A stretch of 64,000 bases of DNA. It comes from Macrostomum lignano. Taxonomy: Eukaryota. The position numbers and the translations under genes were made by a program. A model generated the notes under the pieces. The model saw only the letters and a program-made list of their open reading frames with translations. It ran no database searches and had not been told where the DNA came from. Positions 11,999-39,749 of this stretch are shown in pieces. Location: NCBI GenBank assembly GCA_002269645.1, contig NIVC01000254.1, positions 124,001 through 188,000 of the forward strand, in the 5' to 3' direction. Position 1 is the first letter of the stretch. Each line of letters starts with the position of its first letter.

Positions 11999-12400
11999 GG
12001 CAATAGAAGAGCTTGAAAAAAATTAGACAAAATTTTTGTCGATTTTGTCAATTGTCTATTAGCGCGGATGCTAATTACGAGCTATAATAGATGGTACTAT
12101 GATATCTGGGACCACTAAGTATACTAACGTCCGTTGACAAGTGTGGCAATTGTTCACATAGTTGAAAACTAATTCCTCATTGATTATTTCTTCGTGAAAA
12201 GTTATAACCACGCGCTTAATATTACAATCACCTTGCAAGAAAAATTATGGGGTTTTATTGTAGGTGTTGCAATTAGCAACGTAAAGACATGCTCCTAGTC
12301 TTTGTTAATTTTAAACGGCGTCAGTAGTGAGCTTTTTCGAAATGATACCTTACTAGATTAAAGTAAAAGTCTCTTAAAAAACGGCACAACAGCGATTGGA

Positions 12401-13909
12401 TTAACCAATAGAAACGCGCCCAAGGAGTCGGTGTCCGCATGACATGTGCATAAGAAGAACGAAACAGCTTGTGGAATCTAAATAGGCTCCGCAGCAGATG
12501 ACAGAGTCACAGATGATATTATTGTATCTACTCCGTCCACACGCTTGACAATAGTTCACGTAGTTGAAACCATAGTCTGAAAGAGTGAAACTTCTCAACC
12601 GCTGCCCTGAGCTGCTCACAAAAACCACATTTCCATTAGTTTCGCAGACTGCAATAAATATAGAGCCAATAACAGCGATACAAAAGTTCTGACTGTCTAT
12701 CAGCTTCTTCACACCACCGGTGCCGATGTTTAATCGATGCACAGTTGATGGAGTAGCCAGAATTAAGCTGCGTCCTGAAGCTGTTACACTGCGAGCGTCC
12801 TTCACATGATCGGGCAGCGTCAAGCTCTGATGCAGCTCAAGCGACTCCAGAGAGAGGCAGTTCACGCAACCGTTGCTGAGAATGTACAGCTTCTCCATGT
12901 CATGAGTGAGGCTTATTGGAGCTTGGCACTGCACATTCTGGACACTTCGCAACTGGGTGCCAGTCAGGTCAGTCACAATTAGGGACTGATTGGTTCCAAG
13001 AAGAAATATCTGCTGAAGATGATCAACAAGTGTGCCTGAAGCTAGCTGCACTCCGTTGTTACCAACGTTCCACTGACTGATTATTTGCATGTCTGATCTA
13101 CAGACCATGAAAAACCAATACTGCGAATTATTAGCCACACAAAAAGTGCTTCCGCTAGGGAGAGCTTGAAATCCGTTTTGGTTTGTCTTCGTGACTGCTT
13201 GAGCTGAAAAATAGTATCCAGCAGTATTGCTACAAACAGCAGCAAGAAGATAGAATACATTGCTGGCCAAATTAGGAGACACCTTAACAGTGGGCACGGC
13301 AGACTCAAGTCTAGCTTTTAGTTTCTCACCGTCAGGATCCTCAGCCTCATCTGCGATAGTCTCAACAGCCTGTTGCAATCTCAGTACCTGGTGCACACTG
13401 TTGTCTACCGGATCGACAAACTCTTCTGATATCGGGGCATCCTCAAGCGAGATCTGGACCTCTTGATGCAGCCTGAATCCTTTAGTTGAAACACCTTTGG
13501 CTTCCTCCTCGCCGATATCGACCGAAAGTTTCTCTATGAAGCCGAGAGTTCTCAAGTTCTGCTCTACATTGTCTATTTTGGAGTCCAATCTGCTCATCAC
13601 ATTTTCTCTGCACTGCTGCAATCTCTGAAAGATTGCGTCAAACAGGTCAGCGGCCTCAGCTCTGTCGCTGGTCAGATCAAACAGAGCTCCCCTGTTTGCT
13701 TTCAACAGTTCATCTGTCTTCGATAATACCTCAGTGTTCTCTGATTTAACATCGGCGTATTTCTTTGCGAAAATCTTTTTATCTTTAGCGAGATGTCGCT
13801 CGCAGAGTTGCCCGCTCCAGTATATTCCAAGACCTGACGAAGGCTCTGTGCAATGCGTCATGGTGCACGTCTGTGCATCGGATTCTGCATCGACGCTATC
13901 GGTTGTCAT
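12401..13909 (-). CDS. Cluster gene A2: zinc motif - coiled coil - NHL-like beta-propeller (502 aa)
   Basis: Intact ORF with C15-x4-C-x15-C-x2-H, a heptad-rich helical region and blade motifs (VTDLTGTQLRSV, SSSGQRLRSF). A splice acceptor TTTTCTCTTTTCAG immediately precedes ctATG, indicating a 5'UTR intron. Confidence 0.9.
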   Translation of the reverse strand: MTTDSVDAESDAQTCTMTHCTEPSSGLGIYWSGQLCERHLAKDKKIFAKKYADVKSENTEVLSKTDELLKANRGALFDLTSDRAEAADLFDAIFQRLQQCRENVMSRLDSKIDNVEQNLRTLGFIEKLSVDIGEEEAKGVSTKGFRLHQEVQISLEDAPISEEFVDPVDNSVHQVLRLQQAVETIADEAEDPDGEKLKARLESAVPTVKVSPNLASNVFYLLAAVCSNTAGYYFSAQAVTKTNQNGFQALPSGSTFCVANNSQYWFFMVCRSDMQIISQWNVGNNGVQLASGTLVDHLQQIFLLGTNQSLIVTDLTGTQLRSVQNVQCQAPISLTHDMEKLYILSNGCVNCLSLESLELHQSLTLPDHVKDARSVTASGRSLILATPSTVHRLNIGTGGVKKLIDSQNFCIAVIGSIFIAVCETNGNVVFVSSSGQRLRSFTLSDYGFNYVNYCQACGRSRYNNIICDSVICCGAYLDSTSCFVLLMHMSCGHRLLGRVSIG

Positions 13910-14504
13910 AGCTGAAAAGAGAAAATATTAGCTACTGAGCATACGAGTAATACTAAAAATATATATAAAGACTAAATGCTAATCGCTGCTGAAGCTGTAA
14001 TAGAAGTGATTGTTGATAAAAAACGAATTGTCTATATATGCAAGCGCTTGGGCTTGCTACCATACCATGCTGTACTGCATCGGAACCTCTCATTGGTCAG
14101 TGCCTTCGGTTGGTATTGAGGTTGCACATATTTTTGCGTCTAGGAAAGCAAAAAAATAGTCATGATTTGATGGAAAGCATTGATTCGGTGTTGAGACGAT
14201 TAAGCTCCTCGGGAAGGGCTCAGTATTTCACAAAAATTCAGAGAGAGTTTTAGTAAATAAGATGCTTATAAATTGAAATTATCTAAAAATTTAGAAAGTA
14301 ATTAGCCTGACAGTTTTCATATCGTATAATCATGCGAATAATCACAGAAAGTGAAAATGAGTTACCTAGTACCTACCTAAAATGAGCTTACATAGATACT
14401 ATCCACCTAGCTCATATACTAAATATTTAAGATCTTTATGTTTACTAATATTCAAATAACTAAAAAATGGAGATAAAAACGTTTGAAAAATAAGAAACTT
14501 ATTT

Positions 14505-14519
14505 GTGACGCAATCCGCC
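14505..14519. promoter_or_regulatory. Conserved bZIP-type motif GTGACGCAATCCGCC upstream of A2
   Basis: Identical 15-mer at 27195 and 43385, with a one-mismatch copy at 9569. Confidence 0.45.
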
Positions 14520-15199
14520 GTTTATATTGTGGTTTAGAAAAACAAACTTAAAAACCTTGGAGACTGCGAAAGCATAGCAAAACTTACGAGTACTTGAGCA
14601 TGCAATGGCGGGTACAGCACGCCTGTGTAGCATGAGACAGACTAGGCCTACGGGCTAAGGTCTGCGATCCTACACACCTGCACCCCCTCTATTCTGGTGC
14701 AGGAATGGCAGGAGAACTCTCTCCAAGCTGACTCGCAAGCCGACCCAGGGGTTCACGCCCCGCATGTGTTCAAGGCAGCTCTAGGGCTGCTGGACTGACT
14801 GGGCTCCGGCGGCGGCAACCCATCCGTGGCCTGTTGGCCAAGTTGGGTACGGGCTCCGCCCGGAAGTGCACCTGTGCGTATCAGGTACCTCTGGCCACGG
14901 CTCTGAGGAACAGGTACCACCCTCTGACCTTAACAGGGTATGCGGCCAGCCGCAGGCTCCGGAGGCAGTCCTCCTGCTTCCCTCAAGGACCCAGTGTAGT
15001 ACCGTGCTGATGGTCCTTTGGTTCGGTCTCTGGTTTTTCCAAGCCGGGCTCTTAGCCGGGGAGTTTCTCGGTTGCTAGCGGTCGGGCCGGTACGGGCTTA
15101 AGCCACCCCCCGGTCGCTACCTCTTGGCCTGGTTGTTGGGTTTGGGGTTACGGCCCAGCGGCTTCTCACCTTTAGTCCCCACTCGCCTTTCAGCGACTC

Positions 15200-16662
15200 A
15201 TGGAGTATTCACTTACCTCCGACACGTCCGAGGCTGCTGGAGCACCAACCGAGGTTGGCACCGCGGCCCAGCCGGACATTCGCAACACCGGAACCCCCGG
15301 TGCCTCTCAATCTGCCGCTGCCGCCGCTCAGGATAATACCGGAGTGGCTGGACAAGACAGCGGACCTCAGATTTCAAAAAGAAGGCCCGTAGCATTGCTC
15401 GCTACAAAGCCTTTCTCCAGCGCAAAGCGGAGGAACGGAGGAATGCGAAAGCCGCCCCCCGGCCACCTCTGAGGAGGGTGCCGGTAACTCTGCGAACCCC
15501 GCGGAGGAGCCGACATCCGACAAGGGGGTGGACCCCGCGCGCCGGTCTGATGCGTCAGGTGCCGCCGAAGCTCCTGGTGCGGCTGGCCCCTCCCGTGACC
15601 GGACCTCTGCCCGTGTGGAAGCTCCCACGGCCGTGGAGGGATCCAAAGCGGGGGGCGCTGGCCAAACCACAAAGCCGAAGCGAACCTACGCGGCTATGGC
15701 CAAAAGGCAGCCGGCCCTGGTTATCCAAGGCCAGGAGACGCCTCTTACGGCCGAACAGCTCGACCTTATCTGGCGCAGGTTGGACTCCCACCTGGTCAAG
15801 ATGGCCTTGAGCGGCACTACCATTCGAGTCCAAAAGACGAAAGTCGAGGACCAAGCCCTCTATATCCAGCCCACCGACAGCCAGTCAGGACAGCAGCTCC
15901 TCGAGCTGCTGAAAACCTTCGACTGGGGCACGGAGCTGGAGAACCTGTTCATCTACAGGGAGGACGAGCGACCCCGGACACACCGGCACCGTGCCTGGAT
16001 CCCGGCTCGCAGCTGCATCACCAAGGCCGACGAGCTGCGTCACCTGCTAGTGGCTTCCAACCCGGAGCTACCGGCCAACGGTGTCGTAGTTCACGAGACC
16101 ATCTCCAAGCCAGGCGGAGACGGTTTCACGGCTATTCTTGGACTGTCGGATAGCTGGATGCTCCGCTACCCGGACATGTCCATCATCTCTGTCGGGCTGT
16201 TGCAGATTCAGCTCTTTAGCTTTGAGTCTGACGCCACCCGCCCACCGCCCCGGAGAAGCGTAAGCGGGCAGTCGGGGGCTCTGCCGGGCGGAAACGCCCA
16301 GGAAAAGAAGCTCCCGGCCGTCACGACCCCTCCGAGGACGTGGACCCTATCAGAGGGAAAGCCGCGAAAGCTGCAGCAACAGGCGGACGTGGGAAGGGCC
16401 GGAAACCCGCCCGGAACACTATCCGCTCTGGTCTGACTCAGCGCGCGAAACAGCTGCTGGACACCGCCAAGGCCCCCAACCGCAGCCACCACCAGCCCAG
16501 TGTCACCACTGCGGCCCCCCAGGAAAACCGGGCCGAGAGCGAGAATGCCGCCCAGGTAGCGACCCCGCCCTCGACCATGGAATCCATCCGGGAGGAGCCC
16601 ATGGAGCTGGAGCCTGGAGCTATCGGCGAGGCAGAAGAGGCAGCTCTCCTGCACAACTCGCC

Positions 16663-16666
<4 letters not shown>
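15200..16666 (+). CDS. LINE ORF1 (split by about three single-base frameshifts)
   Basis: ATG at 15200. Overlapping ORFs 15200..15472, 15528..16436 and 16340..16666 chain into one low-complexity/basic ORF1 upstream of ORF2. Confidence 0.7.
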
Positions 16667-20409
<3,743 letters not shown>

Positions 20410-21860
20410 CTGCCCGTGGTCGCCAGGGGTTAGCGAAATGGGCGGCAACGCCTCCTCGCTGTTTCCGGACGCACGGAGCCCCCTGCAGCTAAGTCAAGTC
20501 AAGTACGAGTACTTGAACAAAAAACAACAAAATTGCGTGGAAGTTCTTGAATAATAAGGCTAGCTATAAAAAACGAACTTTGATCGGCGCTAAATTTGAG
20601 CACTGGAAATTACAAATTTTGCAGATATTACGAGCTAACAGATTTTACTAACATAGAATTTCGAAATCCACAGCCAGAAGCCTGTTGCTTACCCATAAAA
20701 ATTTCTGGCGCGCAAGGATTTTTTAGGATCTATATGTGCACTTTATGTAGAGTTGCGGGATTAAAGTGTTGCTTGCAAAATTTAGGGAAGTGAGTTTTCG
20801 GTAATATAAAGTTATGCGATCTCAAACTTGGGCGTCGTTAAGGTTAGGCAATTTAACAAATTGAAAATTTGTGGTGTGAAAGCAACAACCTTCAGACATA
20901 AAGACAGTTACCTATTAACGGCACATTGTTCAAGAATCGAACGAAACTTTCCCCATGACTATCACTAATTTGAGTACTTTAACAGATCGTTATTGAAAGA
21001 GATATATGAAATTGACAAAAATTACACGTCATATAGCCTCAGAATTCTGGGTTTAGTGCTCAAATAGACAATAACTATTTCAATAATTTTTACAGAAAAA
21101 TAATAAAAGATTTTGAGACTTCTAGGCCAAAACTACATACTCGTATTTATGCATATCTATACGCCCGTATAATAGAAAAATATTCTAAACAACAATTGGG
21201 TACGTAAAAATAATAGCATAAACATTTAATAGTTTCCGACAGTAGTAAAGTAGAAAAATCTGTAGCATGTCTTGATGAATACTTTCGGAAAATTTTAGGA
21301 ATGCCAAAACCACATTGCCAGTATAAAAGTATGTTTTTACATTGGTAACACTTACATGGCAGCGGACATTAGGTTAGCTGATTTATCGTAAATTAGAGTG
21401 AGCAAACAAAAATACGATTGTAAGTATTAAAAAACCTCAAATACCAATCGTCTACTTCTGTTCTAAATTGGACGGCTCAATTTAAAAAAGCATAAGAGCT
21501 ATGCAGAAAGGTTGAAATGCTGAAATCAGATGGAATCTAAGCTTTATACTCATGCACACAGCCAGTAGCGTAGCCAAGGTCAAGAAGGGCTTAGAGTCCT
21601 GACAGAAAAGCTAATAGGAACATGAATTTCTAATAGCCAATGAACAACGCAAGTTTTTATAAGGTACAAAAACACTAAAGTTGTATGGACTATAAAAATT
21701 CCTATTAATCTTATTTGTACCGCCATTCAGCTATATCGGCTGTCTCAACACAAATCCAAGAGGATCGAACTAGAAATGTATTGACACTCCCTATCATCGA
21801 ATAAGTTTAAGACTCGGTAGCTCAGTTTTAAAAACTTTCACTATTTACAAAGTTTTAGTA

Positions 21861-22298
21861 CTAGTGGGCTGACTGACTTCTGATATCAACCCAAAGTTTC
21901 TCTGCACAGCTGAGAGACCTCTGGATCTGCTCCATATCTGCAATATTCGAGTCTAATCTACCAAGCACTTTCTCCCTGCACTCATTCACTCTTGCAATGA
22001 CATCGTCAAACAGGTCAGCCGCCTCAGCCCGGTCAGTCGTCAGCTCGAATTGAGCAGCTCTAGCGCGGTTTGTGAGCTGCGAGGCACTAGCGAGTATCGA
22101 ATCGGTTTCATTCTTAATGCTGGCGAACCGACTTTTAAACTGCTCTTTGTCACTATCCAGATGCTCAGCGCAGAGAGGCCCGTCCCAATAGTGTCCGCGG
22201 CCCGAAGCCGGGCTCTGGCAGTGGCTGAGGCTGCACAGTCGGCTTGCTGGTCGATCCTGCTCGTCGCTTGTTGCGCTTGATTTACGTTTTGTTGCCAT
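21861..22298 (-). CDS. Cluster gene B2: N-terminal-only member (zinc motif + coiled coil, 145 aa)
   Basis: Intact ATG-to-stop ORF with C-x4-C-x15-C-x2-H and DRAEAADLF…CRE. It ends after the first coiled-coil half. Confidence 0.75.
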   Translation of the reverse strand: MATKRKSSATSDEQDRPASRLCSLSHCQSPASGRGHYWDGPLCAEHLDSDKEQFKSRFASIKNETDSILASASQLTNRARAAQFELTTDRAEAADLFDDVIARVNECREKVLGRLDSNIADMEQIQRSLSCAEKLWVDIRSQSAH

Positions 22299-22546
22299 CG
22301 TTCAAGCATATATGGGCCCAGTTTTCAAAAAAGAAGTCCATGATATTGTTGTGTCAATCAAAAAACAAAATTTCAACCAGATTTTCCAAAAAATTGTCGG
22401 TACTTGTCACTTCATAATTTTCCTACACATTCACAGTTCTTAACCAGAAAGCAAACATAAAATAATTGAATTAATTTAAGCAAAACGAAGAACTGGTTCA
22501 GTCTGCTTAAAAAAATTAAAAAGTAAACGCAGAGACATTAAATATA

Positions 22547-22829
22547 CTCAGCAACATTGAAAAGTCGCCATTACAGAGGATTCCATCTGTGGTCGCCACT
22601 TTTGAGAGAGTGCAGTTAAAGTCTCTCAATCTTTGCGAGTGACGCAACTTAGCTACGCCACGCGGCAGACTTGAGTTGGGGAATGAAGTGGGGGGAGCGG
22701 TGTGCGAGGGTTGGACGGATTAAAGCTACCCCGATCAGTTTTATAGTATCTTTTATTTCATTCATTCAGATTAGTCCAAGAGAAATTGCTCACTGGTGCA
22801 TAGAGTGATAACTTTTCAATGTTGCTGAG
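22547..22829 (+). mobile_element. ~280-bp MITE, TA TSD (Tc1/mariner-like)
   Basis: TIR CTCAGCAACATTGAAAAGT / ACTTTTCAATGTTGCTGAG, flanked by TA. Confidence 0.85.
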
Positions 22830-23989
22830 TATAATATGTATATTTTAAAAAGTGCCTGCTATAACACAACAAAAGGCATACATGTAGTGTATGAGGATGA
22901 TATAATACATACTTCGTATGATGATACTATAGAGGATCATATACCACACAGCTGACGAGCCAAGTAAACTGAATTGTAAAATAAATTTACGATAAAACTG
23001 GGTACCAGTATAAGCTATCTTAGAAAAATATTCTAATTAAAGCTTACAAGCTAAAAGTAAACACTTACATGCTTTAATTGGTAGATATTGGTAGAATCAA
23101 TGTGCTATCTTTAATTTTAATATACAAATTTGACGGTAAGAAATTGTCTTTTTAAAAAACATTTTTTCTAATAAAAATGATGGAGCGTGGATTCATTACA
23201 GAGTAAAAGTATTGAAAGAAAAAGAGCCAAACAAAAGGAGACTAAGCCATTGAAGTGTTTTGAAATGGAAATTAGTATCAACATGAAATAAATCATTGCA
23301 CGATAACGAAGCACTGCCGCAGATGATAGATTGGCAGGTACTATTGTTTTTGAGCCCCATATATGCTAAACGTCCGTAGAGAAGTGTGACGATTGTCCAC
23401 AGTGTTGCAACCTATTTGAAACAATGACAAAAATCCTTGTCATTTTATCACGCGCATAATATTTCAATTCGACGCGTTCAATTAGCGATTTGCTTCACGT
23501 ACACACGGTTAGTTTGCCAGGCTGTCACCGACTCGATCGCTTGATCTACGACTAGTCGCTGGACTCTTTCTGCAGTTGCTTTTCTGTCTTTTTAAGAAGC
23601 ATAGCTGAAATGCGTAATTCGACAGACTGCCACCGATTGTCACTCAATAGATTGGTCACCTTTTAACTAGAGTTGATTACAAGTGTAATAGCTGATAACA
23701 GTGCATTACCGAAATTAGGTGAAGATAAACCAGCTTTAAAGGAAATCCGGTCAGTACTGTCTCCTTTTGAGATGTTTGACAGAATACTGTGTATTTTGGC
23801 TAAGTAAACTATAAAAAAGGTTTTGTCGAGAAAGCTGCACCAAAATAAATACAAGCGTAAAAGTAAACGATACCTGTAACAATAAAGAACTCAAATTTTG
23901 CAAAAAACAAGGTGTACCACAAATCTATCATTACTACAAGTGCAGGTAGCTACTTGAGATAATGCTGATACACTTTCTCGATAAATAAA

Positions 23990-24350
23990 AACCAAGCAAA
24001 CACTAGAAAGCTAATCTAAAACCAAGCTGAAATGGAACACAGAGCAACGCCCCGTACTAAACAGGTTATACGAGCATTCGATAGCTGGTCGGACTAGTTG
24101 CCTATAAACGCTGAAATATTCCGTCTGGGTCCCTCACTTTCAGGTCTCTAACAGCAGAGTGACCCTGATGCAAAAAAATCGGAATGGGATCGATGGTCAA
24201 AAACACGAAATTCTTCTGGTGAAGCCTAGCACGTAGCATCCCCAGCTTGGGATGTCCAGTATTCACCGTGTCTCACTACGGCAGTACGCAGCTGGGAGGG
24301 CAGCTACAAATCTTGTGTCCTAAAAGATGGAATATGGAACAAGCTGGATG
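23990..24350 (-). mobile_element. Possible decayed LINE RT C-terminal remnant (duplicate at ~30680-31040)
   Basis: Minus-strand frames give VRDLKVRDPDGIFQRL / RQLVRPAIEC, resembling the LYxxLVRPxLEY region of LINE RTs. Heavily broken. Confidence 0.35.
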
Positions 24351-24540
24351 ACACGAGAGTTATATAGTACTGCTTCGTACAATCTATTGGTTTATATGAG
24401 CAATTACTGATTACATTAGTAGCCCTGTTAGAAGAGTAGAGGCCCATGGGATTATCTGTGAACATATTTACTAACCATCGTTACTGCCAAATAAGTAATC
24501 TAAAAAACACCATTGCGCTTTATCACCTAAAGAAAATGTA

Positions 24541-24817
24541 CTGAGAAACATTGAAAAGTCGCCAATCTGTGCGCCAATGAGAGATTTCTCTTGGACTATT
24601 CTGAAATCTGAAATAAAAGACGCGAGAAACTGAGGGGTAGCTTTAATCAGTTCAACTCACATACACGGCTTCCCACACTTCATTCCTCAACCAAAGTCTG
24701 CCGCGTGGCGTCGCTAAGTTGCGTCAGTCGCACAGATTGAGATACTTTACCTGAATTCTCAAAAGTGGCGACCACAGACGGAATCTTCTGTGATGGCGAC
24801 TTTTCGATGTTGCTAAG
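24541..24817 (-). mobile_element. Same MITE family, opposite orientation
   Basis: Reverse complement aligns along 22547-22829. TA on both sides. Confidence 0.85.
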
Positions 24818-25085
24818 TATATAATTGTCAAGAAAACAACTACTAATTTTTTAAAAAGGGAATGGACCACGTATAAGAGATATATAAAAATTTGGGCGCG
24901 GTTAAAAACTTACCAAAAAACATACATCAGATTAAAACTGCATGCAAGCATAATAGTATAGGTAGCAACTAAAAACATTCTCCTTGTCTTTGATCAATTT
25001 TAAAGAGGGTCCTTAGTTAAATTATTCGAAATCATACCTTAATATAGTAAAAGTATCAGAACAAAACGAGCAAAAAGCTCCATGA

Positions 25086-26603
25086 TTAACCATAACCAAT
25101 AGAAATGCGCCCAAGGGATCGGTGTCCGCATGACATGGGCACAAGAAGAACGAAACAGCTTGTGGAATCTAGGTAGGCACCGCTGCAGATTATAGATTGC
25201 CAGATGGTATTGCAATTGCCCTGTCGACAAGTTTGGCAATAGTTTACGTAGTTGAAACCCGAGTTTGTCAGACTGAAACTTTTCAACCGCTGCCCTGAGC
25301 TGCTAAAAAAAACAGCATTTCCATTAGTTTCGAACACTGCAATCAATCCAGAGTCAATGACAGCGACACAAAAATTCTGACTGTCTATCAGCTTCTTCAC
25401 ACCACCGGTGCCGATGTTTAACCGATGCACAGTTGATGGAGTAGCCAGAATTAAGCTGCGTCCTGAAGCTGTTACACTGCGAGCGTCCTTCACATTATCG
25501 GGCAGCGTCAAGCTCTGCTGCAGCTCAAGCGACTCCAGAGAGAGGCAGTTCACGCAACCGTTGCTGAGAATGTACAGCTTCTCCATGTCATGAGTGAGGC
25601 TTATTGGAGGTTGGCACTGCATATTCTGGACACTTCGCAACTGGGTGCCAGTCAGGTCAGTCACAATTAGGGTCTGATTGGTTCCAAGAAGAAATATCTG
25701 CTGAAGACGATCTACAAATGTGCCTGAAGCTAGCTGCACTCCGTTGTTACCAACGTTCCACTGACTGATTATTTGCATGTCTGAATTACAGACCATGAAA
25801 AACCAATACTGCGAACTATTATGGTTACCCACACAAAAAGTGCTTCCGCTAGGGAGAGCTTGAAATCCGTTTTGGTTTGTCTTCCTGACTGCTAGAGCTG
25901 AGAAATAGTATCCAGTAGTGTTGCAGCAAACAGCAGCGAAAACATAGATTACATTGCAGGCCAAAATAGGCGCCACCTTAACAGTGGGCACGGCAGACTT
26001 AAGTCTACTTTCTCGTTTCTTATCCTCAGGATCCTCAGCCTCATCTGCAAAAGTCTCAACAGCTTGTTGCAATCTCAGTACCTGCTGCACACTGCTGTCC
26101 ACCGGATCGAGAAACTCTTCTGATATCGTGGCATCCTCAAGCGAGATCTGGACCTCTTGATGCAGCCTGAATCCTTTAGTTGAAACACCTTTGGCTTCCT
26201 CCTCGCCGATCTCGATCGCGAGTTTTTCTATGAAACTGAGAGCTCTCAAGTTCTGCTCCACATTGTCTATTTTGGAGTCCAATCTGCTCATCACATTTTC
26301 TCTGCACTGCTGCAATCTCTGAAAGATTGCGTCAAACAGATCAGCGGCCTCAGCTCTGTCGCTGGTCAGTTCAAACAGAGCTCCCCTGTTTGCTTTTAAC
26401 AGTTCATCTGTCTTCGATAATACCTCAGTGTTCTCTGATTTAACATCGGCGTATTTCTTTGCGAAAATCTTCTCATCTTTAGCGAGATGCCGCTCGCAGA
26501 GTTGCCCGCTCCAGTATATTCCAAGACCTGACGAAGGCTCTGTGCAATGCGTCATGGTGCACGTCTGTGCATCGGATTCTGCATCGACGCTATCGGTTGT
26601 CAT
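25086..26603 (-). CDS. Cluster gene A3 (505 aa)
   Basis: Intact ORF with the same architecture as A2 and a near-identical N-terminus. Confidence 0.9.
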   Translation of the reverse strand: MTTDSVDAESDAQTCTMTHCTEPSSGLGIYWSGQLCERHLAKDEKIFAKKYADVKSENTEVLSKTDELLKANRGALFELTSDRAEAADLFDAIFQRLQQCRENVMSRLDSKIDNVEQNLRALSFIEKLAIEIGEEEAKGVSTKGFRLHQEVQISLEDATISEEFLDPVDSSVQQVLRLQQAVETFADEAEDPEDKKRESRLKSAVPTVKVAPILACNVIYVFAAVCCNTTGYYFSALAVRKTNQNGFQALPSGSTFCVGNHNSSQYWFFMVCNSDMQIISQWNVGNNGVQLASGTFVDRLQQIFLLGTNQTLIVTDLTGTQLRSVQNMQCQPPISLTHDMEKLYILSNGCVNCLSLESLELQQSLTLPDNVKDARSVTASGRSLILATPSTVHRLNIGTGGVKKLIDSQNFCVAVIDSGLIAVFETNGNAVFFSSSGQRLKSFSLTNSGFNYVNYCQTCRQGNCNTIWQSIICSGAYLDSTSCFVLLVPMSCGHRSLGRISIGYG

Positions 26604-28572
26604 AGCATGAAAGAGAAAATATTAGCTACTGAGCATACGAGTAATACTAAAAATATATATAAATACTAAATGCTAATCGCTGCTGAAGCTGTAATAGAAG
26701 TGATTGTTGATAAAAAACGAATTGTCTATATATGCAAGCGCTTGGGCTTGCTACCATACCATGCTGTACTGCACCGGAACCTCTCATTGGTCAGTGCCTT
26801 CGGTTGGTATTGAGGTTGCACATATTTTTGCGTCTAGGAAAGCAAAAAAATAGTCATGATTTGATGGAAAGCATTGATTCGGTGTTGAGACGTTTAAGCT
26901 CCTCGGGAAGGGCTCAGTATTTCACAAAAATTCAGAGAGAGTTTTAGTAAATCAGAAGATGCTTATAAATTGAAATTATCTAAAAATTTAGAAAGTCATT
27001 AGCCTGACAGTTTTCATATCGTATAATCATGCGAATAATCACAGAAAGTGAAAATGAGTTACCTAGTACCTACCTAAAATGAGCTTACATACAAACTATC
27101 CACCTATACTAAATCTCTAAGATCTTTATGTTTACTAATATTCAAATAACTAAAAAATGGAGATAAAAACGTTTGAAAAATAAGAAACTTATTTGTGACG
27201 CAATCCGCCGTTTATATTGTGGTTTAGAAAAACAAACTTAAAAACCTTCGAGACTGCGAAAGCATAGCAGCTATAAAAAACGAACTTTGATCGGCGCTAA
27301 ATTTGAGCACTGGAAATGACAAATTTTGCAGATATTACGAGCTAACAGATTTTACTAACATAGAACTTCGAAATCCACAGCCAGAAGCCTGTTGCTTACC
27401 CATAAAAATTTCTGGCGCGCAAGGATTTTTTAGGATCTATATGTGAACTTTATGTAGAGTTGCGGGATTAAAGTGTTGCTTGCAAAAATTTAGGGAAGTG
27501 AGTTTTCGGTAATATAAAGTTATGCGATCTCAAACTTGGGCGTCGTTAAGGTTAGGCAATTTAACAAATCGAAAATTTGTGGAGTGTGAAAGCAACAACC
27601 TTCAGACAAAAAGACAGTTACCTATCAACGGCACATTGTTCAAGAATCGAACGAAACTTTCCCCATGACTATCACTAATTTGAGTACTTTAACAGATCGT
27701 TATTGAAAAAGATATATGAAATTGACAAAAATTACACGTCATATAGCCTCAGAATTCTGGGTTTAGTGCTCAAATAGACAATAACTATTTCAATAATTTT
27801 TTATAGAAAAATAATAAAGGATTTTGAGACTTCTAGGCCAAAACTATATACTCGTATTTATGCATATCTATACGCCCGTATAATAGAAAAAAATTCTAAA
27901 CAACAATTGGGTACGTAAAAATAATAGCATAAACATTAAATAGTTTCCGACAGTAGTAAAGTAGAAAAATCTGTAGCATGTCTTGATGAATACTTTCGGA
28001 AAATTTTAGGAATGCCAAAACCACATTGCCAGTATAAAAGTATGTTTTTACATTGGTAACACTTACATGGCAGCGGACATTAGGTTAGCTGATTTATCGT
28101 AAATTAGAGTGAGCAAACAAAAATACGATTGTAAAAATATTAAAAAACCTCAAACACCAATCGTCTACTTCTGTTCTAAATTGGACGGCTCAATTTAAAA
28201 AAGCATAAGAGCTATGCAGAAAGGTTGAAATGCTGAAATAAGATGGAATCTAAGGTTTATACTCATGCACACAGCCAGTAGCGTAGCCAAGGTCAAGAGG
28301 GACTTAGAGTCCTGACAGAAAAGCTGATAGGAACATGAATTTCTAATAGCCAATGAACAACGCAAGTTTTTATAAGGTATAGAAACACTTAAGTTGTGTG
28401 GACTATAGAAATTCCTATTAATCTTATTTGTCCCACCAATCAGCTATATCGGCTGTCTCAACACAAAGCCAAGAGATCAAACTAGAAATGTATTGACACT
28501 CCCTATCATCGAATAAGTTTAAAACTCGGTAGCTCAGTTTAAAAAACTTTCACAATTTACAAAGTTTTAGTA

Positions 28573-29010
28573 CTAGTGGGCTGACTGACTTTTGACATCA
28601 ACCGAAAGTTTCTCTACACAGCTGAGAGACCTCTGGATCTGCTCCATATCTGCAATATTCGAGTCTAATCTACCAAGCACTTTCTCCCTGCACTCATTCA
28701 CTCTTGCAATGACAGCCTCAAACAGGTCAGCCGTCTCAGCCCGGTCAGTCGTCAGCTCGAATTGAGCAGCTTTAGCGCGGTTGGTGAGCTGCGAAGCACC
28801 AGCGAGTATCGAATCGGTTTCATTCTTAATGCTGGCGAACCGACTTTTAAACTGCTCTTTGTCACTCTCGAGATGCTCAGCGCAGAGAGGCCCGGCCCAA
28901 TAGTGTCCGCGGCCCGAAGCCGGGCTCTGGCAGTGGCTGAGGCTGCACAGTCGGCTTGCTGGTCGATCCTGCTCGTCGCTTGTTGCGCTTGATTTACGTT
29001 TTGTTGCCAT
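28573..29010 (-). CDS. Cluster gene B3: N-terminal-only member (145 aa)
   Basis: Duplicate of B2 with ATG at 29010 and the same stop. The 26-aa upstream extension in the ORF track is probably not used. Confidence 0.75.
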   Translation of the reverse strand: MATKRKSSATSDEQDRPASRLCSLSHCQSPASGRGHYWAGPLCAEHLESDKEQFKSRFASIKNETDSILAGASQLTNRAKAAQFELTTDRAETADLFEAVIARVNECREKVLGRLDSNIADMEQIQRSLSCVEKLSVDVKSQSAH

Positions 29011-29255
29011 TGTTAAAGCATATATGGGCCCAGTTTTCAAAAAAGCAGTCCATGATATTGTCGTGTCAATCAAAAAACAAACTTTCAACCAGATTTTCCA
29101 AAAAATTGTCGGTACTTGTCACTTCATAATTTTCCTACACATTCACAGTTCTTAACCAGAAAGCAAACATAAAATAATTGAATTAATTTAAGCAAAACAA
29201 AGAACTGGTTCAGTCTGCTTAAAAAATGTAAGTAAACGCAGAGACATTAAATATA

Positions 29256-29538
29256 CCCAGAAACATTGAAAAGTCGCCATTACAGAGGATTCCATCTGTG
29301 GTCGCCACTTTTGAGAGAGTGCAGGTAAAGTCTCTCAATCTTTGCGAGTGACGCAACTTAGCTACGCCACGCGGCAGACTTGAGTTGGGGAATGAAGTGG
29401 GGGGAGCGGTGTGCGAGGGTTGGACGGATTGAAGCTACCCCGATCAGTTTTATAGTATCTTTTATTTCATTCATTCAGATTAGTCCAAGAGAAATTGCTC
29501 ACTGGTGCATAGAGTGATAACTTTTCAATGTTGCTGAG
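29256..29538 (+). mobile_element. TA-MITE copy (duplicate of 22547-22829)
   Basis: Near-identical sequence with the same TIRs. Confidence 0.85.
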
Positions 29539-31230
29539 TATATATGTATATTTTAAAAAGTGCCTGCTATAACACAACAAAAGGCATACATGTAGTGTAC
29601 TTCGTATGAGGATACTATAGAGGATCATATACCACACAGCTGACGAGCCAAGTAAACTGAATTGTAAAATAAATTTACGATAAAACTGGGTACCAGTATA
29701 AGCTATCTTAGAAAAATATTCTAATTAAAGCTTACAAGCTAAAAGTAAACACTTACATGCTTTAATTGGTAGATATTGGTAGAATCAATGCGCTATCTTT
29801 AATTTTATTATACAAATTTGACGGTAAGAAATTGTCTTTTTAAAAAAACATTTTTTCTAATAAAAATGATGGAGCGTGGATTCATTACAGAGTAAAAGTA
29901 TTGAAAGAAAAAGAGCCAAACAAAAAGGAGACTAAGCCATTGAAGTGTTTTGAAATGGAAATTAGTATCAACATGAAATAAATCATTGCACGATAACGAA
30001 GCACTGCCGCAGATGATAGATTGGCAGGTACTATTGTTTTTGAGCCCCATATATGCTAAACGTCCGTAGAGAAGTGTGACGATTGTCCACAGTGTTGCAA
30101 CCTATTTGAAACAATGACAAAAATCCTTGTCATTTTATCACGCGCATAATATTTCAATTCGACGCGTTCAATTAGCGATTTGCTTCACGTACACACGGTT
30201 AGTTTGCCAGGCTGTCACCGACTCGATCGCTTGATCTACGACTAGTCGCTGGACTCTTTCTGCAGTTGCTTTTCTGTCTTTTTAAGAAGCATAGCTGAAA
30301 TGCGTAATTCGACAGACTGCCACCGATTGTCACTCAATAGATTGGTCACCTTTTAACTAGAGTTGATTACAAGTGTAATAGCTGATAACAGTGCATTACC
30401 GAAATTAGGTGAAGATAAACCAGCTTTAAAGGAAATCCGGTCAGTACTGTCTCCTTTTGAGATGTTTGACAGAATACTGTGTATTTTGGCTAAGTAAACT
30501 ATAAAAAAGGTTTTGTCGAGAAAGCTGCACCAAAATAAATACAAGCGTAAAAGTAAACGATACCTGTAACAATAAAGAACTCAAATTTTGCAAAAAACAA
30601 GGTGTACCACAAATCTATCATTACTACAAGTGCAGGTAGCTACTTGAGATAATGCTGATACACTTTCTCGATAAATAAAAACCAAGCAAACACTAGAAAG
30701 CTAATCTAAAACCAAGCTGAAATGGAACACAGAGCAACGCCCCGTACTAAACAGGTTATACGAGCATTCGATAGCTGGTCGGACTAGTTGCCTATAAACG
30801 CTGAAATATTCCGTCTGGGTCCCTCACTTTCAGGTCTCTAACAGCAGAGTGACCCTGATGCAAAAAAATCGGAATGGGATCGATGGTCAAAAACACAAAA
30901 TTCTTCTGGTGAAGCCTAGCACGTAGCATCCCCAGCTTGGGATGTCCAGTATTCACCGTGTCTCACAACGGCAGTACGCAGCTGGTAGGGCAGCTACAAA
31001 TCTAGTGTCCTAAAAGATGGAGTATGGAACAAGCTGGATGACACGAGAGTTATATAGTACTGCTTCGTACAATCTATTGGTTTATATGAGCAATTAATGA
31101 TTACATTAGTAGCCCTGTTAGAAGAGTAGAGGCCCATGGGATTATCTGTGAACATATTTACTAACCATCGTTACTGCCAAATAAGTAATCTAAAAAACAC
31201 CATTGCGCTTTATCACCTAAAGAAAATGTA

Positions 31231-31509
31231 CTGAGAAACATTGAAAAGTCGCCAATCTGTGCGCCAATGAGAGATTTCTCTTGGACTATTCTGAAATCTG
31301 AAATAAAAGACGCGAGAAACTGAGGGGTAGCTTTAATCAGTTCAACCCACATACACGGCTTCCCACACTTCATTCCTCAACCAAAGTCAGCCGCGTGGCG
31401 TCGCTAAGTTGCGTCAGTCGCACAGATTGAGATACTTTTTACCTGAATTCTCAAAAGTGGCGACCACAGACGGAATCTTCTGTGATGGCGACTTTTCGAT
31501 GTTGCTAAG
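31231..31509 (-). mobile_element. TA-MITE copy (duplicate of 24541-24817)
   Basis: Near-identical sequence with the same TIRs. Confidence 0.85.
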
Positions 31510-31776
31510 TATATAATTGTCAAGAAAACAACTACTAATTTTTAAAAAACGGAAATGGACTACGTATAAGATATATAAAAATTTGGGCGCGGTTAAAAAC
31601 TTACCACAAAACATACATCAGATTAAAACTGCATGCAAGCAAAATAGTATAGGTAGCAACTAAAAACATTATCCTCGTCTCCGATCAATTTTAAAAAAGG
31701 TCCTTAGTTAAATTATTCGAAATCATACCTTAATAGAGTAAAAGTATCAGAACAAAACGAGCAAACAGCTCCATGA

Positions 31777-33291
31777 TTAATCATAACCAAAAGAAACGCG
31801 CCCAAGGAGTTGGTGACTGCATGACCTGTGCACAAGAAGAACAAAACAGCTTGTGGAATCTAAGTAGGCACCGCTGCAGATTATAGATTGGCAGGTGGTA
31901 TTGTAATTGCCCTGTCGACAAGTTTGGCAATAGTTTACGTAGTTGAAACCCGAGTTTGTCAGACTGAAACTTTTCAAACGCTGCCCTGAGCTGCTTAAAA
32001 AAACAGCATTTCCATTAGTTTCGAACACTGCAATCAATCCAGAGTCAATGACAGCGACACAAAAGTCCTGACTGTCTATCAGCTTCTTCACACCACCGGT
32101 GCCGATGTTTAATCGATGTACAGCTGATGGAGTAGCCAGAATTAAGCTGCGTCCTGAAGCTGTTACACTGCGAGCGTCCTTCACATGATCAGGCAGCGTC
32201 AAGCTCTGCTGCAGCTCAAGTGACTCCAGAGAGAGGCAGTTCACGCAACCGTTGCTGAGAATGTACAGCTTCTCCATGTCATGAGTGAGGCTTATTGGAG
32301 CTTGGCACTGCACATTCTGGACACTTCGCAACTGGGTGCCAGTCAGGTCAGTCACAATTAGGGACTGATTGGTTCCAAGAAGAAATATCTGCTGAAGATG
32401 ATCAACAAGTGTGCCTGAAGCTAGCTGCACTCCGTTGTTACCAACGTTCCACTGACTGATTATTTGCATGTCTGATCTACAGACCATGAAAAACCAATAC
32501 TGCGAATTATTATTAGCCACACAAAAAGTGCTTCCGCTAGGGAGAGCTTGAAATCCGTTTTGGTTTGTCTTCCTGACTGCTTGAGCTGAGAAATAGTATC
32601 CAGTAGTGTTGCAGCAAACAGCAGCGAAAACATAGAAAACATTGCTGGTCAAATTAGGCGCCACCTTAACAGTGGGCACGGCAGACTCAAGTCTAGCGTT
32701 TCGTTTCTTATCCTCAGGATCCTCTGCCTCATCTGCAAAAGTCTCAACAACTTGTTGCAATCTCAGTACCTGCTGCACACTGTTGTCTACCGGATCGACA
32801 AACTCTTCTGATATCGGGGCATCCTCAAGCGAGATCTGGACCTCTTGATGCAGCCTGAATCCTTTAGTTGAAACACCTTTGGCTTCCTCCTCGCCGATCT
32901 CGACCGAAAGTTTCTCTATGAAGCCGAGAGCTATCAAATTCTGCTCCACATTGTCTATTTTAGAGTCCAATCTGCCGATCACATTTTCTCTGCACTGCTG
33001 CAATCTCTGAAAGATTGCGTCAAACAGGTCAGCGGCCTCAGCTCTGTCGCTTGTCAGATCAAACAGAGCTCCTCGGTTTGATTTTAGGAGTTCGTTTGTC
33101 TTCGCTAATGGTTCAGTGTTCTTTGATTTTATATCGGCGTATCTCCCCGCAAAAATCTTCTCATCTTTAGCGAGATGTCGCTCGCAGAGTTGCCCGCTCC
33201 AGAATTTGCCAAGACCTGAGGATGGCTCCGTGCAATGCGTCATGGAGCACGTCTGTGCATCGGATTCTGCATCGACGCTTTCTGTTGCCAT
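31777..33291 (-). CDS. Cluster gene A4 (504 aa)
   Basis: Intact ORF, 5'UTR acceptor before ATG, same architecture. Confidence 0.9.
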   Translation of the reverse strand: MATESVDAESDAQTCSMTHCTEPSSGLGKFWSGQLCERHLAKDEKIFAGRYADIKSKNTEPLAKTNELLKSNRGALFDLTSDRAEAADLFDAIFQRLQQCRENVIGRLDSKIDNVEQNLIALGFIEKLSVEIGEEEAKGVSTKGFRLHQEVQISLEDAPISEEFVDPVDNSVQQVLRLQQVVETFADEAEDPEDKKRNARLESAVPTVKVAPNLTSNVFYVFAAVCCNTTGYYFSAQAVRKTNQNGFQALPSGSTFCVANNNSQYWFFMVCRSDMQIISQWNVGNNGVQLASGTLVDHLQQIFLLGTNQSLIVTDLTGTQLRSVQNVQCQAPISLTHDMEKLYILSNGCVNCLSLESLELQQSLTLPDHVKDARSVTASGRSLILATPSAVHRLNIGTGGVKKLIDSQDFCVAVIDSGLIAVFETNGNAVFLSSSGQRLKSFSLTNSGFNYVNYCQTCRQGNYNTTCQSIICSGAYLDSTSCFVLLVHRSCSHQLLGRVSFGYD

Positions 33292-39533: not shown

Positions 39534-39749
39534 AGCTAAAAAGAGAAATAATAAACATAGTATTAGCTATTAAACATATGAGAAATACAATATTGTCTTG
39601 ATAGAAGATACACCGGTTGTGCCAACAGAGAACTCTGTATATTATTTGCAGATAGCTGCTCTTCGTAGCAGTACAATGTCATTAGAAACAGAGAGAAGCT
39701 AGAAGGAAGATAGCTCAGAGGCAATACAGCAATTGGACTTTATTGGCTC

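What the first reader, a model, noticed from the sequence alone, without database searches (positions are those of the whole stretch)
12401..33291. A2, A3 and A4 are recombinant mosaics
Seen: the N-terminus and 5' flank give A2=A3 (MTTDS…GIYW…KKYADVKSE) versus A4. The central propeller gives A2=A4 (CRSD, TLVDH, NQSL, VQCQAP, PDHV) versus A3. The late blades give A3=A4 (VAVIDSGLIAVFE…KSFSLTNSG…CQTCRQ) versus A2. Pseudogene A5 shares CNSD and QPP with A3 and the terminal HMSCGHRLLGRVSIG with A2. Inference: unequal crossover plus gene conversion shuffles propeller segments, with pseudogenes as possible donors, generating a combinatorial repertoire.
Basis: partly seen in the sequence, partly recalled or inferred. 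Interest (0 to 1): 0.7.

Follow-up and report, generated by a model that had tools for sequence, protein, structure and literature searches.

The report
Hybrid genes in a flatworm tandem array
Three neighbouring copies of an uncharacterised coiled-coil/beta-propeller gene in the flatworm Macrostomum lignano really are patchworks of one another, but the pattern is what ordinary unequal crossing-over plus gene conversion produces in a tandem gene array, not evidence of a special diversity-generating system.

Summary
In a three-way DNA alignment of A2, A3 and A4, the sites that show which copy is the odd one out are strongly clustered (138 same-type neighbours against 73±7 expected, p≤5e-5). 3SEQ-like, PHI and GENECONV-like tests and segment trees all reject a single tree.

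The window is M. lignano contig NIVC01000254.1. A second, collinear copy of the array lies on contig NIVC01000829.1 and carries the same A3-type hybrid (B3, 98.6% identical). The mosaic is therefore old and not a local misassembly.

The best model is one non-allelic crossover between ancestral A2 and A4, inside the conserved coiled-coil coding segment (A3 26085-26245). It duplicated a 6.7-kb unit and created A3, which has its 5' third and promoter flank from A2 and its 3' two-thirds and 3' flank from A4. Shorter conversion tracts came later.

The "A2=A4 versus A3" centre consists mostly of substitutions private to the A3 lineage. An A2+A4 clade gets only 43% bootstrap there.

Synonymous divergence within one gene pair ranges from 0 to 0.35, while dN/dS is about 0.4-0.6. 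A5's shared tracts also occur in its intact counterpart B5. Pseudogene donors and a "combinatorial repertoire" are therefore unsupported.

This is a known kind of process acting on a lineage-restricted gene family.

The parts
12401..13909 (-). A2, an intact 502-aa gene. In the crossover model it is the parental copy that supplied the 5' third and promoter flank of A3.
   Evidence: ORF. Its counterpart on the second contig, B2, shares its structure throughout, including the divergent late-blade block (1 difference in 75 sites).
12451..12679 (-). A2/B2-specific 'late blade' block (aa ~410-487), 15-25% different from A3, A4, A5, B3 and B5.
   Evidence: A2 is the odd copy at 36 of 39 three-way sites. 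The A2+B2 clade has 100% bootstrap, and A3+A4+A5+B3+B5 has 86%. dS between A2 and A3 is 0.29 here, against 0.018 in the centre.
12843..13133 (-). Central tract of 291 bp that is identical between A2 and A4 (A4 coordinates 32222-32512). It is a candidate recent A2-A4 gene-conversion tract.
   Evidence: It is the longest identical run between A2 and A4. A2-A4 dS is 0.027 for codons 255-420, against 0.25-0.35 at both ends. The shared derived AGA (CRSD) codon lies just upstream, at A2 13097-13098 and A4 32476-32477.
13910..14579 (-). 5' flank of A2, homologous to the 5' flank of A3.
   Evidence: 97.15% identity over 667 bp with 26610-27269.
14580..20561 (+). Non-LTR retrotransposon insertion that interrupts the repeat unit. 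It is context, not part of the mosaic.
   Evidence: RVT_1 at 1.6e-31 and endonuclease domains. The empty site is seen in the A3 unit, and the insertion is flanked by a 12-nt direct repeat. It is absent from the second contig.
20562..24962 (.). Spacer I_a between A2 and A3, a duplicate of spacer I_b.
   Evidence: 1.77% divergence from 27269-31650 overall, but patchy. One run of 974 bp is identical (23233-24206 = 29923-30896), while 21556-22555 shows 3-6%.
25086..26603 (-). A3, an intact 505-aa hybrid gene. Its 5' third resembles A2 and its 3' two-thirds resemble A4.
   Evidence: 3SEQ-like test with A3 as child of A2 and A4: maximum descent 64 over 164 sites, p<5e-5. It groups with A2/B2 at 100% bootstrap in the 5' segment and with A4 at 98% in the 3' flank. 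The same hybrid is present as B3 and B3b on contig NIVC01000829.1 at 98.6% identity.
26085..26245 (-). Interval that contains the A2-like to A4-like junction of A3 (CDS nt 359-519, aa 120-173, coiled-coil region).
   Evidence: The last site where A2=A3 but A4 differs is at 26245. From 26085 onward there is a consistent run where A3=A4 but A2 differs. The AlphaFold model places aa 37-202 in helices.
26604..27269 (-). 5' flank of A3, a copy of the A2 5' flank.
27269..31650 (.). Spacer I_b between A3 and A4.
31777..33291 (-). A4, an intact 504-aa gene (NCBI BOX15_Mlig017959g3). It is the parental copy that supplied the 3' two-thirds of A3. Its own 5' third is of a different type, shared only with B4.
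   Evidence: P0001 contains the A4 sequence. Its 5' part is nearest to B4 (10-11 differences in 117 sites) and its 3' part nearest to A3/B3 (0 in 73, 3 in 108). The triplet B4 + B3 -> A4 is significant at p<0.001 with a switch near CDS nt ~513.
33292..33376 (-). Short stretch of the A4 5' flank that is homologous to A2/A3. Homology ends beyond it.
   Evidence: 79.5% identity over 84-88 bp and nothing further upstream.
38077..39588 (-). A5 pseudogene. Its 5' half is broken by deletions and frameshifts, and a 271-aa ORF remains at 38186-39001.
   Evidence: Three-frame translation. Its counterpart B5 is intact, and the two are identical over the last ~990 bp.

Best explanation
A2, A3 and A4 are members of a direct tandem array on a Macrostomum lignano contig. 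All members lie on the minus strand: A1, a truncated copy, A2, A3, A4, pseudogene A5 and A6. The family is lineage-restricted and intronless, and each gene encodes a short Cys/His motif, a long coiled coil and a C-terminal beta-propeller.

The dominant event was one non-allelic homologous (unequal) crossover between the ancestral A2 and A4 genes. They had misaligned within the well-conserved coiled-coil coding segment. The crossover duplicated a 6.7-kb unit consisting of the 5' third of A2, its promoter flank, the 4.4-kb spacer and the 3' two-thirds of A4. This left the arrangement A2 - spacer - A3 - spacer - A4, in which A3 is a hybrid of the anti-Lepore type.

The event predates the split between the paralogous subgenome copies of this region, because the second contig carries the same hybrid. 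Further unequal crossovers then changed copy number; the second array has at least two more units.

Non-reciprocal gene conversion then homogenised some tracts. These include the gene centre (among them an A2-A4 tract), about 1 kb of the spacers, the late-blade region shared between the A5/B5 and A3/A4 lineages, and a 6-bp insertion shared by A3 and A4.

What is shown: block-wise incongruence that extends into non-coding flanks and synonymous sites, the duplicated spacers, presence of the hybrid on two contigs, and the copy-number difference. What is inferred: the order and direction of events, and which of A4 or B4 keeps the ancestral 3' part.

The process looks like ordinary concerted, birth-and-death evolution under relaxed purifying selection.
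For: Unit structure. 24963-27269 matches 12274-14579 at 92.4%. 27269-30603 matches 20562-23913 at 97.2%. 21087-26692 matches 27798-33376 at 95.9%. Together these give 2.25 copies of a 6.7-kb repeat. A retrotransposon insertion sits exactly at the unit junction.

Divergence inside and outside the proposed duplicated segment. Inside it is 2-5%: about 2.5% for the A2/A3 5' part, 2.85% for the 5' flank, 1.8% for the spacers and about 5% for the A3/A4 3' part. Outside it is 8-25%.

Clustering and tests. (p from <5e-5 to 1e-3; PHI z=-11). Among the four window copies, the split (A2,A3 | A4,A5) is supported by 21 sites, 15 of them in the 5' end. The split (A2,A5 | A3,A4) is supported by 26 sites, 16 of them in the 3' flank.

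Segment trees. (A2,A3,B2,B3) gets 100% in the 5' segment, (A2,B2) 100% in the late blades, and (A3,A4,B3) 98% in the 3' flank.

Synonymous divergence. A2-A4 dS by segment runs 0.25, 0.35, 0.00, 0.19, 0.027, 0.34.

Second array. It is collinear at 95-99.4%, and B3 differs from A3 at no site over 712 bp. It also carries extra units with a 6827-bp period.

Later conversion. A 974-bp identical run lies within spacers that are otherwise 1.5-6% apart. B3 and B3b are identical over 1.73 kb within units that are 98.5% identical. A2 and A4 share a derived dinucleotide that B2, B3 and A3 lack. A3 and A4 share a 6-bp insertion that B3 lacks.

Context. Most of the M. lignano assembly is present as three paralogous copies that differ by about 2% (PMC10733133).
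Against: The A3-A4 divergence in the supposedly co-duplicated 3' part (about 5%) is higher than that of the spacers (1.8%). Fitting this requires either faster change in the A3 lineage (32 private changes, dN/dS ~1.3 against B3) or later homogenisation of the spacers.

A4 and its positional counterpart B4 differ by 9% in the 5' part and far more in the 3' part. A4 may therefore itself be a fusion product. Alternatively B4 may have been altered.

13.7 kb of the second array (NIVC01000829.1 29846-43544) could not be fetched.

No reads were available, so errors in assembly or polishing of this repeat-rich triplicated genome cannot be excluded for the fine-scale identical tracts.

The Hudson-Kaplan Rm values (12-39) are inflated by homoplasy and do not count events reliably.
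Confidence: 0.8

Rival explanations
1. Many independent short gene-conversion events, with pseudogenes such as A5 as donors, shuffle propeller segments among A2, A3 and A4. This creates a selectively maintained combinatorial repertoire, possibly one that also diversifies somatically.
For: Several conversion-like tracts exist beyond the main crossover. The array contains pseudogenes and gene fragments. The variable blocks include the last propeller blades. The family is lineage-restricted and clustered in tandem.
Against: One crossover accounts for two of the three patterns and for the duplicated spacers. The main junction is in the coiled coil, not the propeller. The tracts A5 shares with other copies are also in intact B5, so they predate the pseudogenisation. 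dN/dS is 0.4-0.6 overall and 0.45-0.9 in the variable blocks, with no block convincingly above 1. B3 and B3b are pseudogenes.
Confidence: 0.1
2. Assembly or polishing artefact. The mosaics arise from chimeric joining or consensus mixing of reads from the three near-identical subgenome copies and the tandem units.
For: The Mlig_3_7 assembly is known to misrepresent copy number in places, and 93% of read pairs map to multiple loci (PMC10733133). The patchy runs of perfect identity (974 bp in the spacers, B3=B3b, A5=B5 over ~990 bp) are what homogenising polishing could also produce.
Against: The A3-type hybrid occurs three times on two different contigs, each time with consistent unit context. 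B2 reproduces the divergent 3' block of A2. The blocks differ by 13-25% over hundreds of bp and continue into the flanks and a 4.4-kb duplicated spacer, which polishing cannot create. The two contigs differ by a 6-kb retrotransposon insertion and in unit number, so they are distinct loci.
Confidence: 0.07
3. No recombination. The blocks reflect lineage-specific bursts of substitution or selection in different parts of each copy.
For: The A3 lineage does carry 21+11 private, derived substitutions spread over the centre, with dN/dS near or above 1. This explains most of the 'A2=A4 versus A3' pattern.
Against: The blocks extend into the non-coding 5' and 3' flanks. Synonymous sites show the same switches. 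Conflicting clades each have 98-100% bootstrap. The spacers are duplicated.
Confidence: 0.03

Closest known systems
Hybrid genes made by unequal crossover in tandem arrays (from general knowledge: haemoglobin Lepore/anti-Lepore delta-beta fusions, red/green opsin hybrids, CYP21A2/CYP21A1P chimeras)
   Same: The paralogues are in direct tandem orientation. A hybrid copy takes its 5' part and promoter flank from one parent and its 3' part and downstream flank from the other. The intervening spacer is duplicated. The junction lies within a highly similar stretch. Copy number differs between homologous arrays.
   Different: Here the event is ancient enough to be shared by two paralogous subgenome copies, and later conversion tracts overlay it. 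No phenotype or expression data exist.
Concerted / birth-and-death evolution of clustered multigene families (from general knowledge: plant NLR clusters, vertebrate TRIM and olfactory receptor clusters)
   Same: The array mixes intact genes, pseudogenes and fragments. Homogenisation is patchy, topologies conflict from block to block, and transposons are inserted between units.
   Different: No evidence of diversifying selection was obtained here. The family has no known function.
Pseudogene-templated diversification systems (from general knowledge: chicken immunoglobulin V gene conversion, trypanosome VSG mosaics, Borrelia vlsE)
   Same: A cluster that contains silent or broken copies next to intact ones, with mosaic sequences.
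   Different: There is no single expression site, no demonstrated pseudogene-to-gene transfer, dN/dS is below 1, and no somatic or clonal variation has been shown. The resemblance is superficial.
TRIM-NHL proteins (Drosophila Thin/TRIM32, Brat, TRIM2/3/71)
   Same: A coiled coil followed by a C-terminal beta-propeller. A family profile that includes distant relatives matches the NHL domain of Thin (E=4.2e-7), the NHL-derived designer 'Pizza' proteins, and TRIM2 and Brat weakly.
   Different: Pfam detects no RING and no B-box. No single sequence reaches the NHL gathering score. Foldseek gives only generic propeller matches such as WD40 and BamB. All 18 detectable relatives among 1.84 billion representatives are M. 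lignano proteins.

Membership tests
Unequal-crossover (NAHR) hybrid gene in a tandem array | Parental paralogues in direct tandem orientation | tested here: met
   All family members lie on the minus strand. A2, A3 and A4 are spaced by a 6.7-kb period once the retrotransposon insertion is removed.
Unequal-crossover (NAHR) hybrid gene in a tandem array | Hybrid copy whose 5' part and upstream flank match one parent and whose 3' part and downstream flank match the other | tested here: met
   The A3 5' flank is 97.15% identical to that of A2. The 3' part and flank group with A4 at 98% bootstrap, and the 5' part with A2/B2 at 100%. 3SEQ-like p<5e-5.
Unequal-crossover (NAHR) hybrid gene in a tandem array | Co-duplication of the sequence between the parents | tested here: met
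   Spacers 20562-24962 and 27269-31650 are 98.2% identical over 4.4 kb.
Unequal-crossover (NAHR) hybrid gene in a tandem array | Junction inside a stretch of high sequence identity | tested here: met
   The junction interval is CDS nt 359-519. All copies differ by only 1-11 sites per 120 bp in alignment columns 390-630.
Unequal-crossover (NAHR) hybrid gene in a tandem array | Copy-number variation between homologous arrays | tested here: met
   The array on NIVC01000829.1 has B?, B3b and B3 where the window has only A3, plus 13.7 kb that was not fetched.
Non-reciprocal gene conversion between paralogues | Tracts of (near-)identity bounded by divergent sequence, significant against shuffled site order | tested here: met
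   GENECONV-like test: 18 of 28 pairs reach the permutation floor (Bonferroni 0.014). A2 and A4 are identical over 291 bp, the spacers over 974 bp.
Non-reciprocal gene conversion between paralogues | Derived states shared by paralogues within one array but absent from their counterparts in the other array | tested here: met
   The CRSD dinucleotide is in A2 and A4 only. The TTATGG insertion is in A3 and A4 but not B3. The number of such sites is small.
Non-reciprocal gene conversion between paralogues | Donor and acceptor identified | tested here: inconclusive
   Direction cannot be assigned from these sequences.
Programmed cassette / pseudogene-templated diversification system | Sequence transferred from pseudogene donors into a functional acceptor | tested here: not met
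   The A5 tracts shared with A2, A3 and A4 are also present in intact B5. CNSD is the majority state and QPP is a single nucleotide.
Programmed cassette / pseudogene-templated diversification system | Diversifying selection on the variable segments | tested here: inconclusive
   Pairwise dN/dS is 0.45-0.9 in the variable blocks and 0.4-0.6 overall. There are too few sequences, and they are recombinant, so site models cannot be applied.
Programmed cassette / pseudogene-templated diversification system | Somatic or clonal variation, and a dedicated expression site | not testable with these tools
   No reads or expression data were available.
TRIM-NHL proteins | N-terminal RING and B-box zinc fingers | tested here: not met
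   No Pfam hit in A1-A6. Only a short C-x4-C...C-x2-H motif is seen.
TRIM-NHL proteins | Coiled coil | tested here: met
   The AlphaFold model (mean pLDDT 80) has helices at aa 37-138, 141-157, 168-190 and 195-202.
TRIM-NHL proteins | Six-bladed NHL-repeat propeller | tested here: inconclusive
   The profile matches the Thin NHL domain at E=4.2e-7. The best Pfam NHL score, 16.9 bits in a distant relative, is below the 20-bit cut-off. Foldseek shows a generic propeller fold, E~1e-10 to WD40 and BamB.

The most novel reading that the evidence does not exclude
The array could be a germline, or even somatic, diversity-generating locus for a flatworm-specific family of coiled-coil/propeller recognition proteins. 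Recurrent unequal exchange and conversion among intact copies, pseudogenes and fragments, within and between the three subgenome copies, would then be selectively favoured to create new binding surfaces.
Probability: 0.04. Interest if true: 0.8.

Novelty: new member of a known kind. Interest (0 to 1): 0.3.

Why it matters
The finding documents how a lineage-restricted, unannotated gene family evolves in the neopolyploid model flatworm M. lignano. One datable unequal crossover created a new hybrid gene, array size differs between subgenome copies, and homogenisation is patchy.

There are practical consequences:
- A2 and A3 are intact ORFs that are missing from the NCBI annotation.
- The A4 gene model appears to borrow an exon from a gene fragment about 9 kb away.
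- Read mapping or orthology calls in such arrays will be unreliable.

It does not reveal a new mechanism.

Tried and rejected
- Pfam scan of the A proteins gave no domain.
- The first AlphaFold run, with a shallow 7-sequence alignment, gave pLDDT 40 and was discarded. A 19-sequence alignment gave pLDDT 80.
- Exact-protein look-ups for A2, A3 and the spacer-I_a fragment ORF found nothing. No independent assembly or transcript evidence was obtained, and the missing 13.7 kb of the second array could not be retrieved.
- The third paralogous contig ends 1.7 kb after its A6 copy and adds no A2-A5 sequence.
- Literature searches for the locus tags, and for gene conversion in M. lignano, returned nothing relevant.
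- Hudson-Kaplan Rm was computed (12-39) but rejected as an event count, because homoplasy at 10-20% divergence inflates it.
- A5 as donor of A3's central states was considered and rejected.
- I considered calling the central A2=A4 pattern a third robust topology and rejected it: 43% bootstrap, with only 4 supporting sites among the four window copies.

Full report
WHAT THE WINDOW IS

The window is eukaryotic. [quoted passage not shown] The A4 protein is contained in BOX15_Mlig017959g3, on contig NIVC01000254.1 of assembly GCA_002269645.1.

Every member of one gene family in the window lies on the minus strand:
- A1, 6671-8212
- a truncated 302-aa copy, 11090-11998
- A2, 12401-13909
- A3, 25086-26603
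- A4, 31777-33291
- pseudogene A5, about 38077-39588
- A6, 45692-47215
- several small fragments

A2, A3 and A4 are intact single-ORF genes of 502-505 aa.

CHECKING THE OBSERVATION

At the DNA level I aligned A2, A3 and A4 with their flanks and classified each variable site by which copy is the odd one out. Within the region where all three are homologous there are 207 such sites: A4 is odd at 73, A3 at 44 and A2 at 90. Neighbouring sites are of the same class 138 times, against 73.2±6.7 when site order is shuffled (p≤5e-5). The coding sequence alone gives 101 against 53.4±5.8.

A change-point analysis gives these blocks:
- an "A4 odd" block from the 5' flank to roughly CDS nt 360-400 (51 of 62 sites)
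- a patchy middle that includes a stretch where A3 is odd at 10 sites and A2 and A4 at none
- an "A2 odd" block in the late blades (36 of 39 sites)
- an "A2 odd" 3' flank (27 of 33 sites)

A 3SEQ-like maximum-descent test is significant for all three possible children. It is strongest for A3 as the child of A2 and A4 (64 over 164 informative sites, p<5e-5).

STRUCTURE OF THE LOCUS

A self-comparison shows 2.25 copies of a 6.7-kb repeat:
- copy 1: A2, its 5' flank and spacer I_a (12274-14579 plus 20562-24962)
- copy 2: A3, its 5' flank and spacer I_b (24963-31650)
- partial copy 3: A4, up to 85 bp upstream of its start (31650-33376)

A 5.98-kb non-LTR retrotransposon (reverse transcriptase and endonuclease ORF, 16663-19110) sits exactly at the junction of the A2 5' flank and I_a. 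It is bounded by a 12-nt direct repeat, and the empty site is visible in the A3 unit.

The two 4.4-kb spacers are 98.2% identical overall, but unevenly so. One 974-bp run is identical (23233-24206 = 29923-30896), while 21556-22555 is 3-6% divergent.

A SECOND COPY OF THE ARRAY

Contig NIVC01000829.1 carries a collinear array, which I call B, at 95-99.4% identity. M. lignano is a neopolyploid, and most of its assembly is present as three paralogous copies about 2% apart (PMC10733133). A third contig carries another A6 copy but ends immediately after it.

Array B differs from the window array in these ways:
- It lacks the retrotransposon.
- B5 is an intact counterpart of pseudogene A5.
- B4 has a 51-aa insertion.
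- It has at least two extra 6.8-kb units (B?, B3b, B3) where the window has only A3.
- B2 and B1 correspond to A2 and A1.

B3 and B3b are identical over 1.73 kb, including two stop codons, although their units are only 98.5% identical.

The key point is that B3 is 98.6% identical to A3, with no difference over 712 bp, and has the same hybrid make-up. B2 likewise shares the divergent late-blade block of A2 (1 difference in 75 sites). The mosaic therefore predates the divergence of the two arrays. It is not a chimera confined to one contig.

FORMAL TESTS WITH EIGHT COPIES

- PHI test: observed 0.149 against 0.220±0.006 in permutations (z=-11, p<2e-4).
- GENECONV-like fragment test: 18 of 28 pairs sit at the permutation floor.
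- Segment NJ trees conflict with high support. (A2,A3,B2,B3) gets 100% in the 5' flank plus CDS 1-360. (A2,B2) gets 100% and (A3,A4,A5,B3,B5) 86% in the late blades. (A3,A4,B3) gets 98% in the 3' flank.
- Among the four window copies, the split (A2,A3 | A4,A5) has 21 supporting sites, 15 of them in the 5' end. The split (A2,A5 | A3,A4) has 26, of which 16 are in the 3' flank. The split (A2,A4 | A3,A5) has only 4.
- Synonymous divergence within a single gene pair swings more than ten-fold. A2-A4 dS by segment is 0.25, 0.35, 0.00, 0.19, 0.027, 0.34.

The dS swings, together with blocks that extend into the non-coding flanks, rule out block-wise selection as the cause.

MOST LIKELY HISTORY

Write the 5' third as alpha (A2 type) or beta (A4 type), and the 3' two-thirds as delta (A2 type) or epsilon (A4 type). 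Read in the sense of the genes, the array is A4 = beta+epsilon, A3 = alpha+epsilon and A2 = alpha+delta, with duplicated spacers between them.

This is exactly the product of one unequal crossover between misaligned ancestral A2 and A4. The duplicated segment runs: alpha, 5' flank, spacer, epsilon. Divergence inside that segment is 2-5%, against 8-25% outside it.

The junction in A3 lies between 26245 and 26085 (CDS nt 359-519, aa 120-173). This stretch is one of the best conserved among all copies, as expected for homologous recombination. In this event A2 and A4 are parents and only A3 is the recombinant.

Later events are also needed:
- copy-number change in array B
- homogenised tracts in the spacers
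- a late-blade tract shared by the A5/B5 and A3/A4 lineages, which are otherwise about 10% apart
- a 6-bp insertion shared by A3 and A4 but not B3
- probably an A2-A4 conversion in the centre

The evidence for the A2-A4 conversion is a 291-bp identical tract, dS of 0.027, and the shared derived AAT>AGA change that produces CRSD, which is absent from B2, B3, B4, B5 and A5.

A4 compared with B4 is also mosaic: the 5' part is nearest to B4 and the rest nearest to A3/B3 (p<0.001). Without the unfetched 13.7 kb of array B I cannot say which of the two was altered.

1. The central "A2=A4 versus A3" pattern is mainly due to substitutions private to the A3 lineage. Twenty-one are shared with B3 and eleven are unique to A3, and almost none is seen in outgroup copies. 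TFVDR and PDNV belong to A3 and B3. NQT and MQCQPP are in A3 only. An A2+A4 clade has 43% bootstrap.

2. The main junction is in the coiled-coil part. The AlphaFold model built on a 19-sequence alignment (mean pLDDT 80) shows helices at aa 37-202 and an all-beta propeller at aa 205-504. Foldseek matches WD40 and BamB propellers at E~1e-10. A family profile matches NHL propellers, with Thin at E=4.2e-7. The word "propeller" is therefore justified, but only the boundary at about aa 410 falls inside it.

3. Pseudogene A5 as a donor is not supported. CNSD is the majority state, QPP is one nucleotide, and the tracts A5 shares with other copies are also present in intact B5.

4. dN/dS is 0.4-0.6 overall and below 1 in the variable blocks, and A3's counterpart is a pseudogene. 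This looks like relaxed purifying selection, not a selected repertoire.

THE GENE FAMILY

No Pfam domain is detected. Only 18 proteins among 1.84 billion representatives match the family profile, and all those I checked are M. lignano hypothetical proteins, typically in three near-identical copies. The architecture resembles TRIM-NHL proteins without the RING and B-box, but membership is not established. Function is unknown.

CAVEATS

- No sequencing reads were available, so fine-scale identical tracts could partly reflect consensus polishing in a triplicated genome.
- My tests are re-implementations (permutation-based) of 3SEQ, PHI and GENECONV, not the published programs.
- Event order and conversion direction are inferred.

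VERDICT

The mosaic is real, statistically secure and biologically ordinary. It consists of a hybrid gene of the anti-Lepore type created by unequal crossover in a tandem array, with gene conversion overlaid on it, in a lineage-restricted flatworm gene family.

Noticed in passing
window 14579-20562: A 5.98-kb GC-rich insertion carrying an endonuclease and reverse-transcriptase ORF (16663-19110, plus strand), i.e. a non-LTR retrotransposon. It is flanked by the 12-nt direct repeat ACGAGTACTTGA. It sits exactly at the repeat-unit junction and is absent from the paralogous array on NIVC01000829.1, so it is a recent insertion.
   Followed up: partly
window 21861-22298 and 28573-29010 (minus strand): Each 6.7-kb unit contains a 145-aa ORF that is a diverged N-terminal fragment of the same family, covering the Cys/His motif and the start of the coiled coil (about 47% identical to A4 aa 15-137). 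The I_b copy is annotated as a gene in the NCBI record.
   Followed up: partly
window 11090-11998 (minus strand): A 302-aa ORF (P0006) made up only of the C-terminal propeller part of a divergent family member. It lies between A1 and A2.
   Followed up: no
window 42734-42829 and 31777-33291; L004: The NCBI gene model for A4 (558 aa) uses as its first exon a 32-aa N-terminal gene fragment about 9.4 kb upstream, beyond pseudogene A5. This is probably an annotation artefact. The same structure is modelled for B5 (P0002). A2 and A3 are intact ORFs, but no gene with their product is on record.
   Followed up: partly
L006 5586-7096 and 12406-13916 (NIVC01000829.1): B3 and B3b, two tandem counterparts of A3, are identical over 1.73 kb and share the same two premature stop codons. 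Their 6.8-kb units are only 98.5% identical.
   Followed up: partly
L001 20739-22400 (NIVC01000829.1): B4, the positional counterpart of A4, carries a 51-aa Cys-rich insertion in the C-terminal region. It differs from A4 by 9% or more nearly everywhere.
   Followed up: no
window 38077-39060 versus L001 ~13960-14948: Pseudogene A5 and intact B5 are identical over their last ~990 bp. All 57 gap-free polymorphic sites at which they differ lie in the 5' part, along with the deletions there. Divergence between the two subgenome copies is therefore very patchy.
   Followed up: no
window 22542-22831 versus 24539-24822 (and 29251-29543 versus 31226-31514): Each spacer contains an inverted repeat of about 290 bp at about 83% identity. 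It may be a transposon remnant.
   Followed up: no
window 6671-8212: A1 aligns with the family only to about aa 415. Its C-terminus is unrelated, so it is either truncated or has a replaced end. Its counterpart B1 is 97% identical.
   Followed up: no
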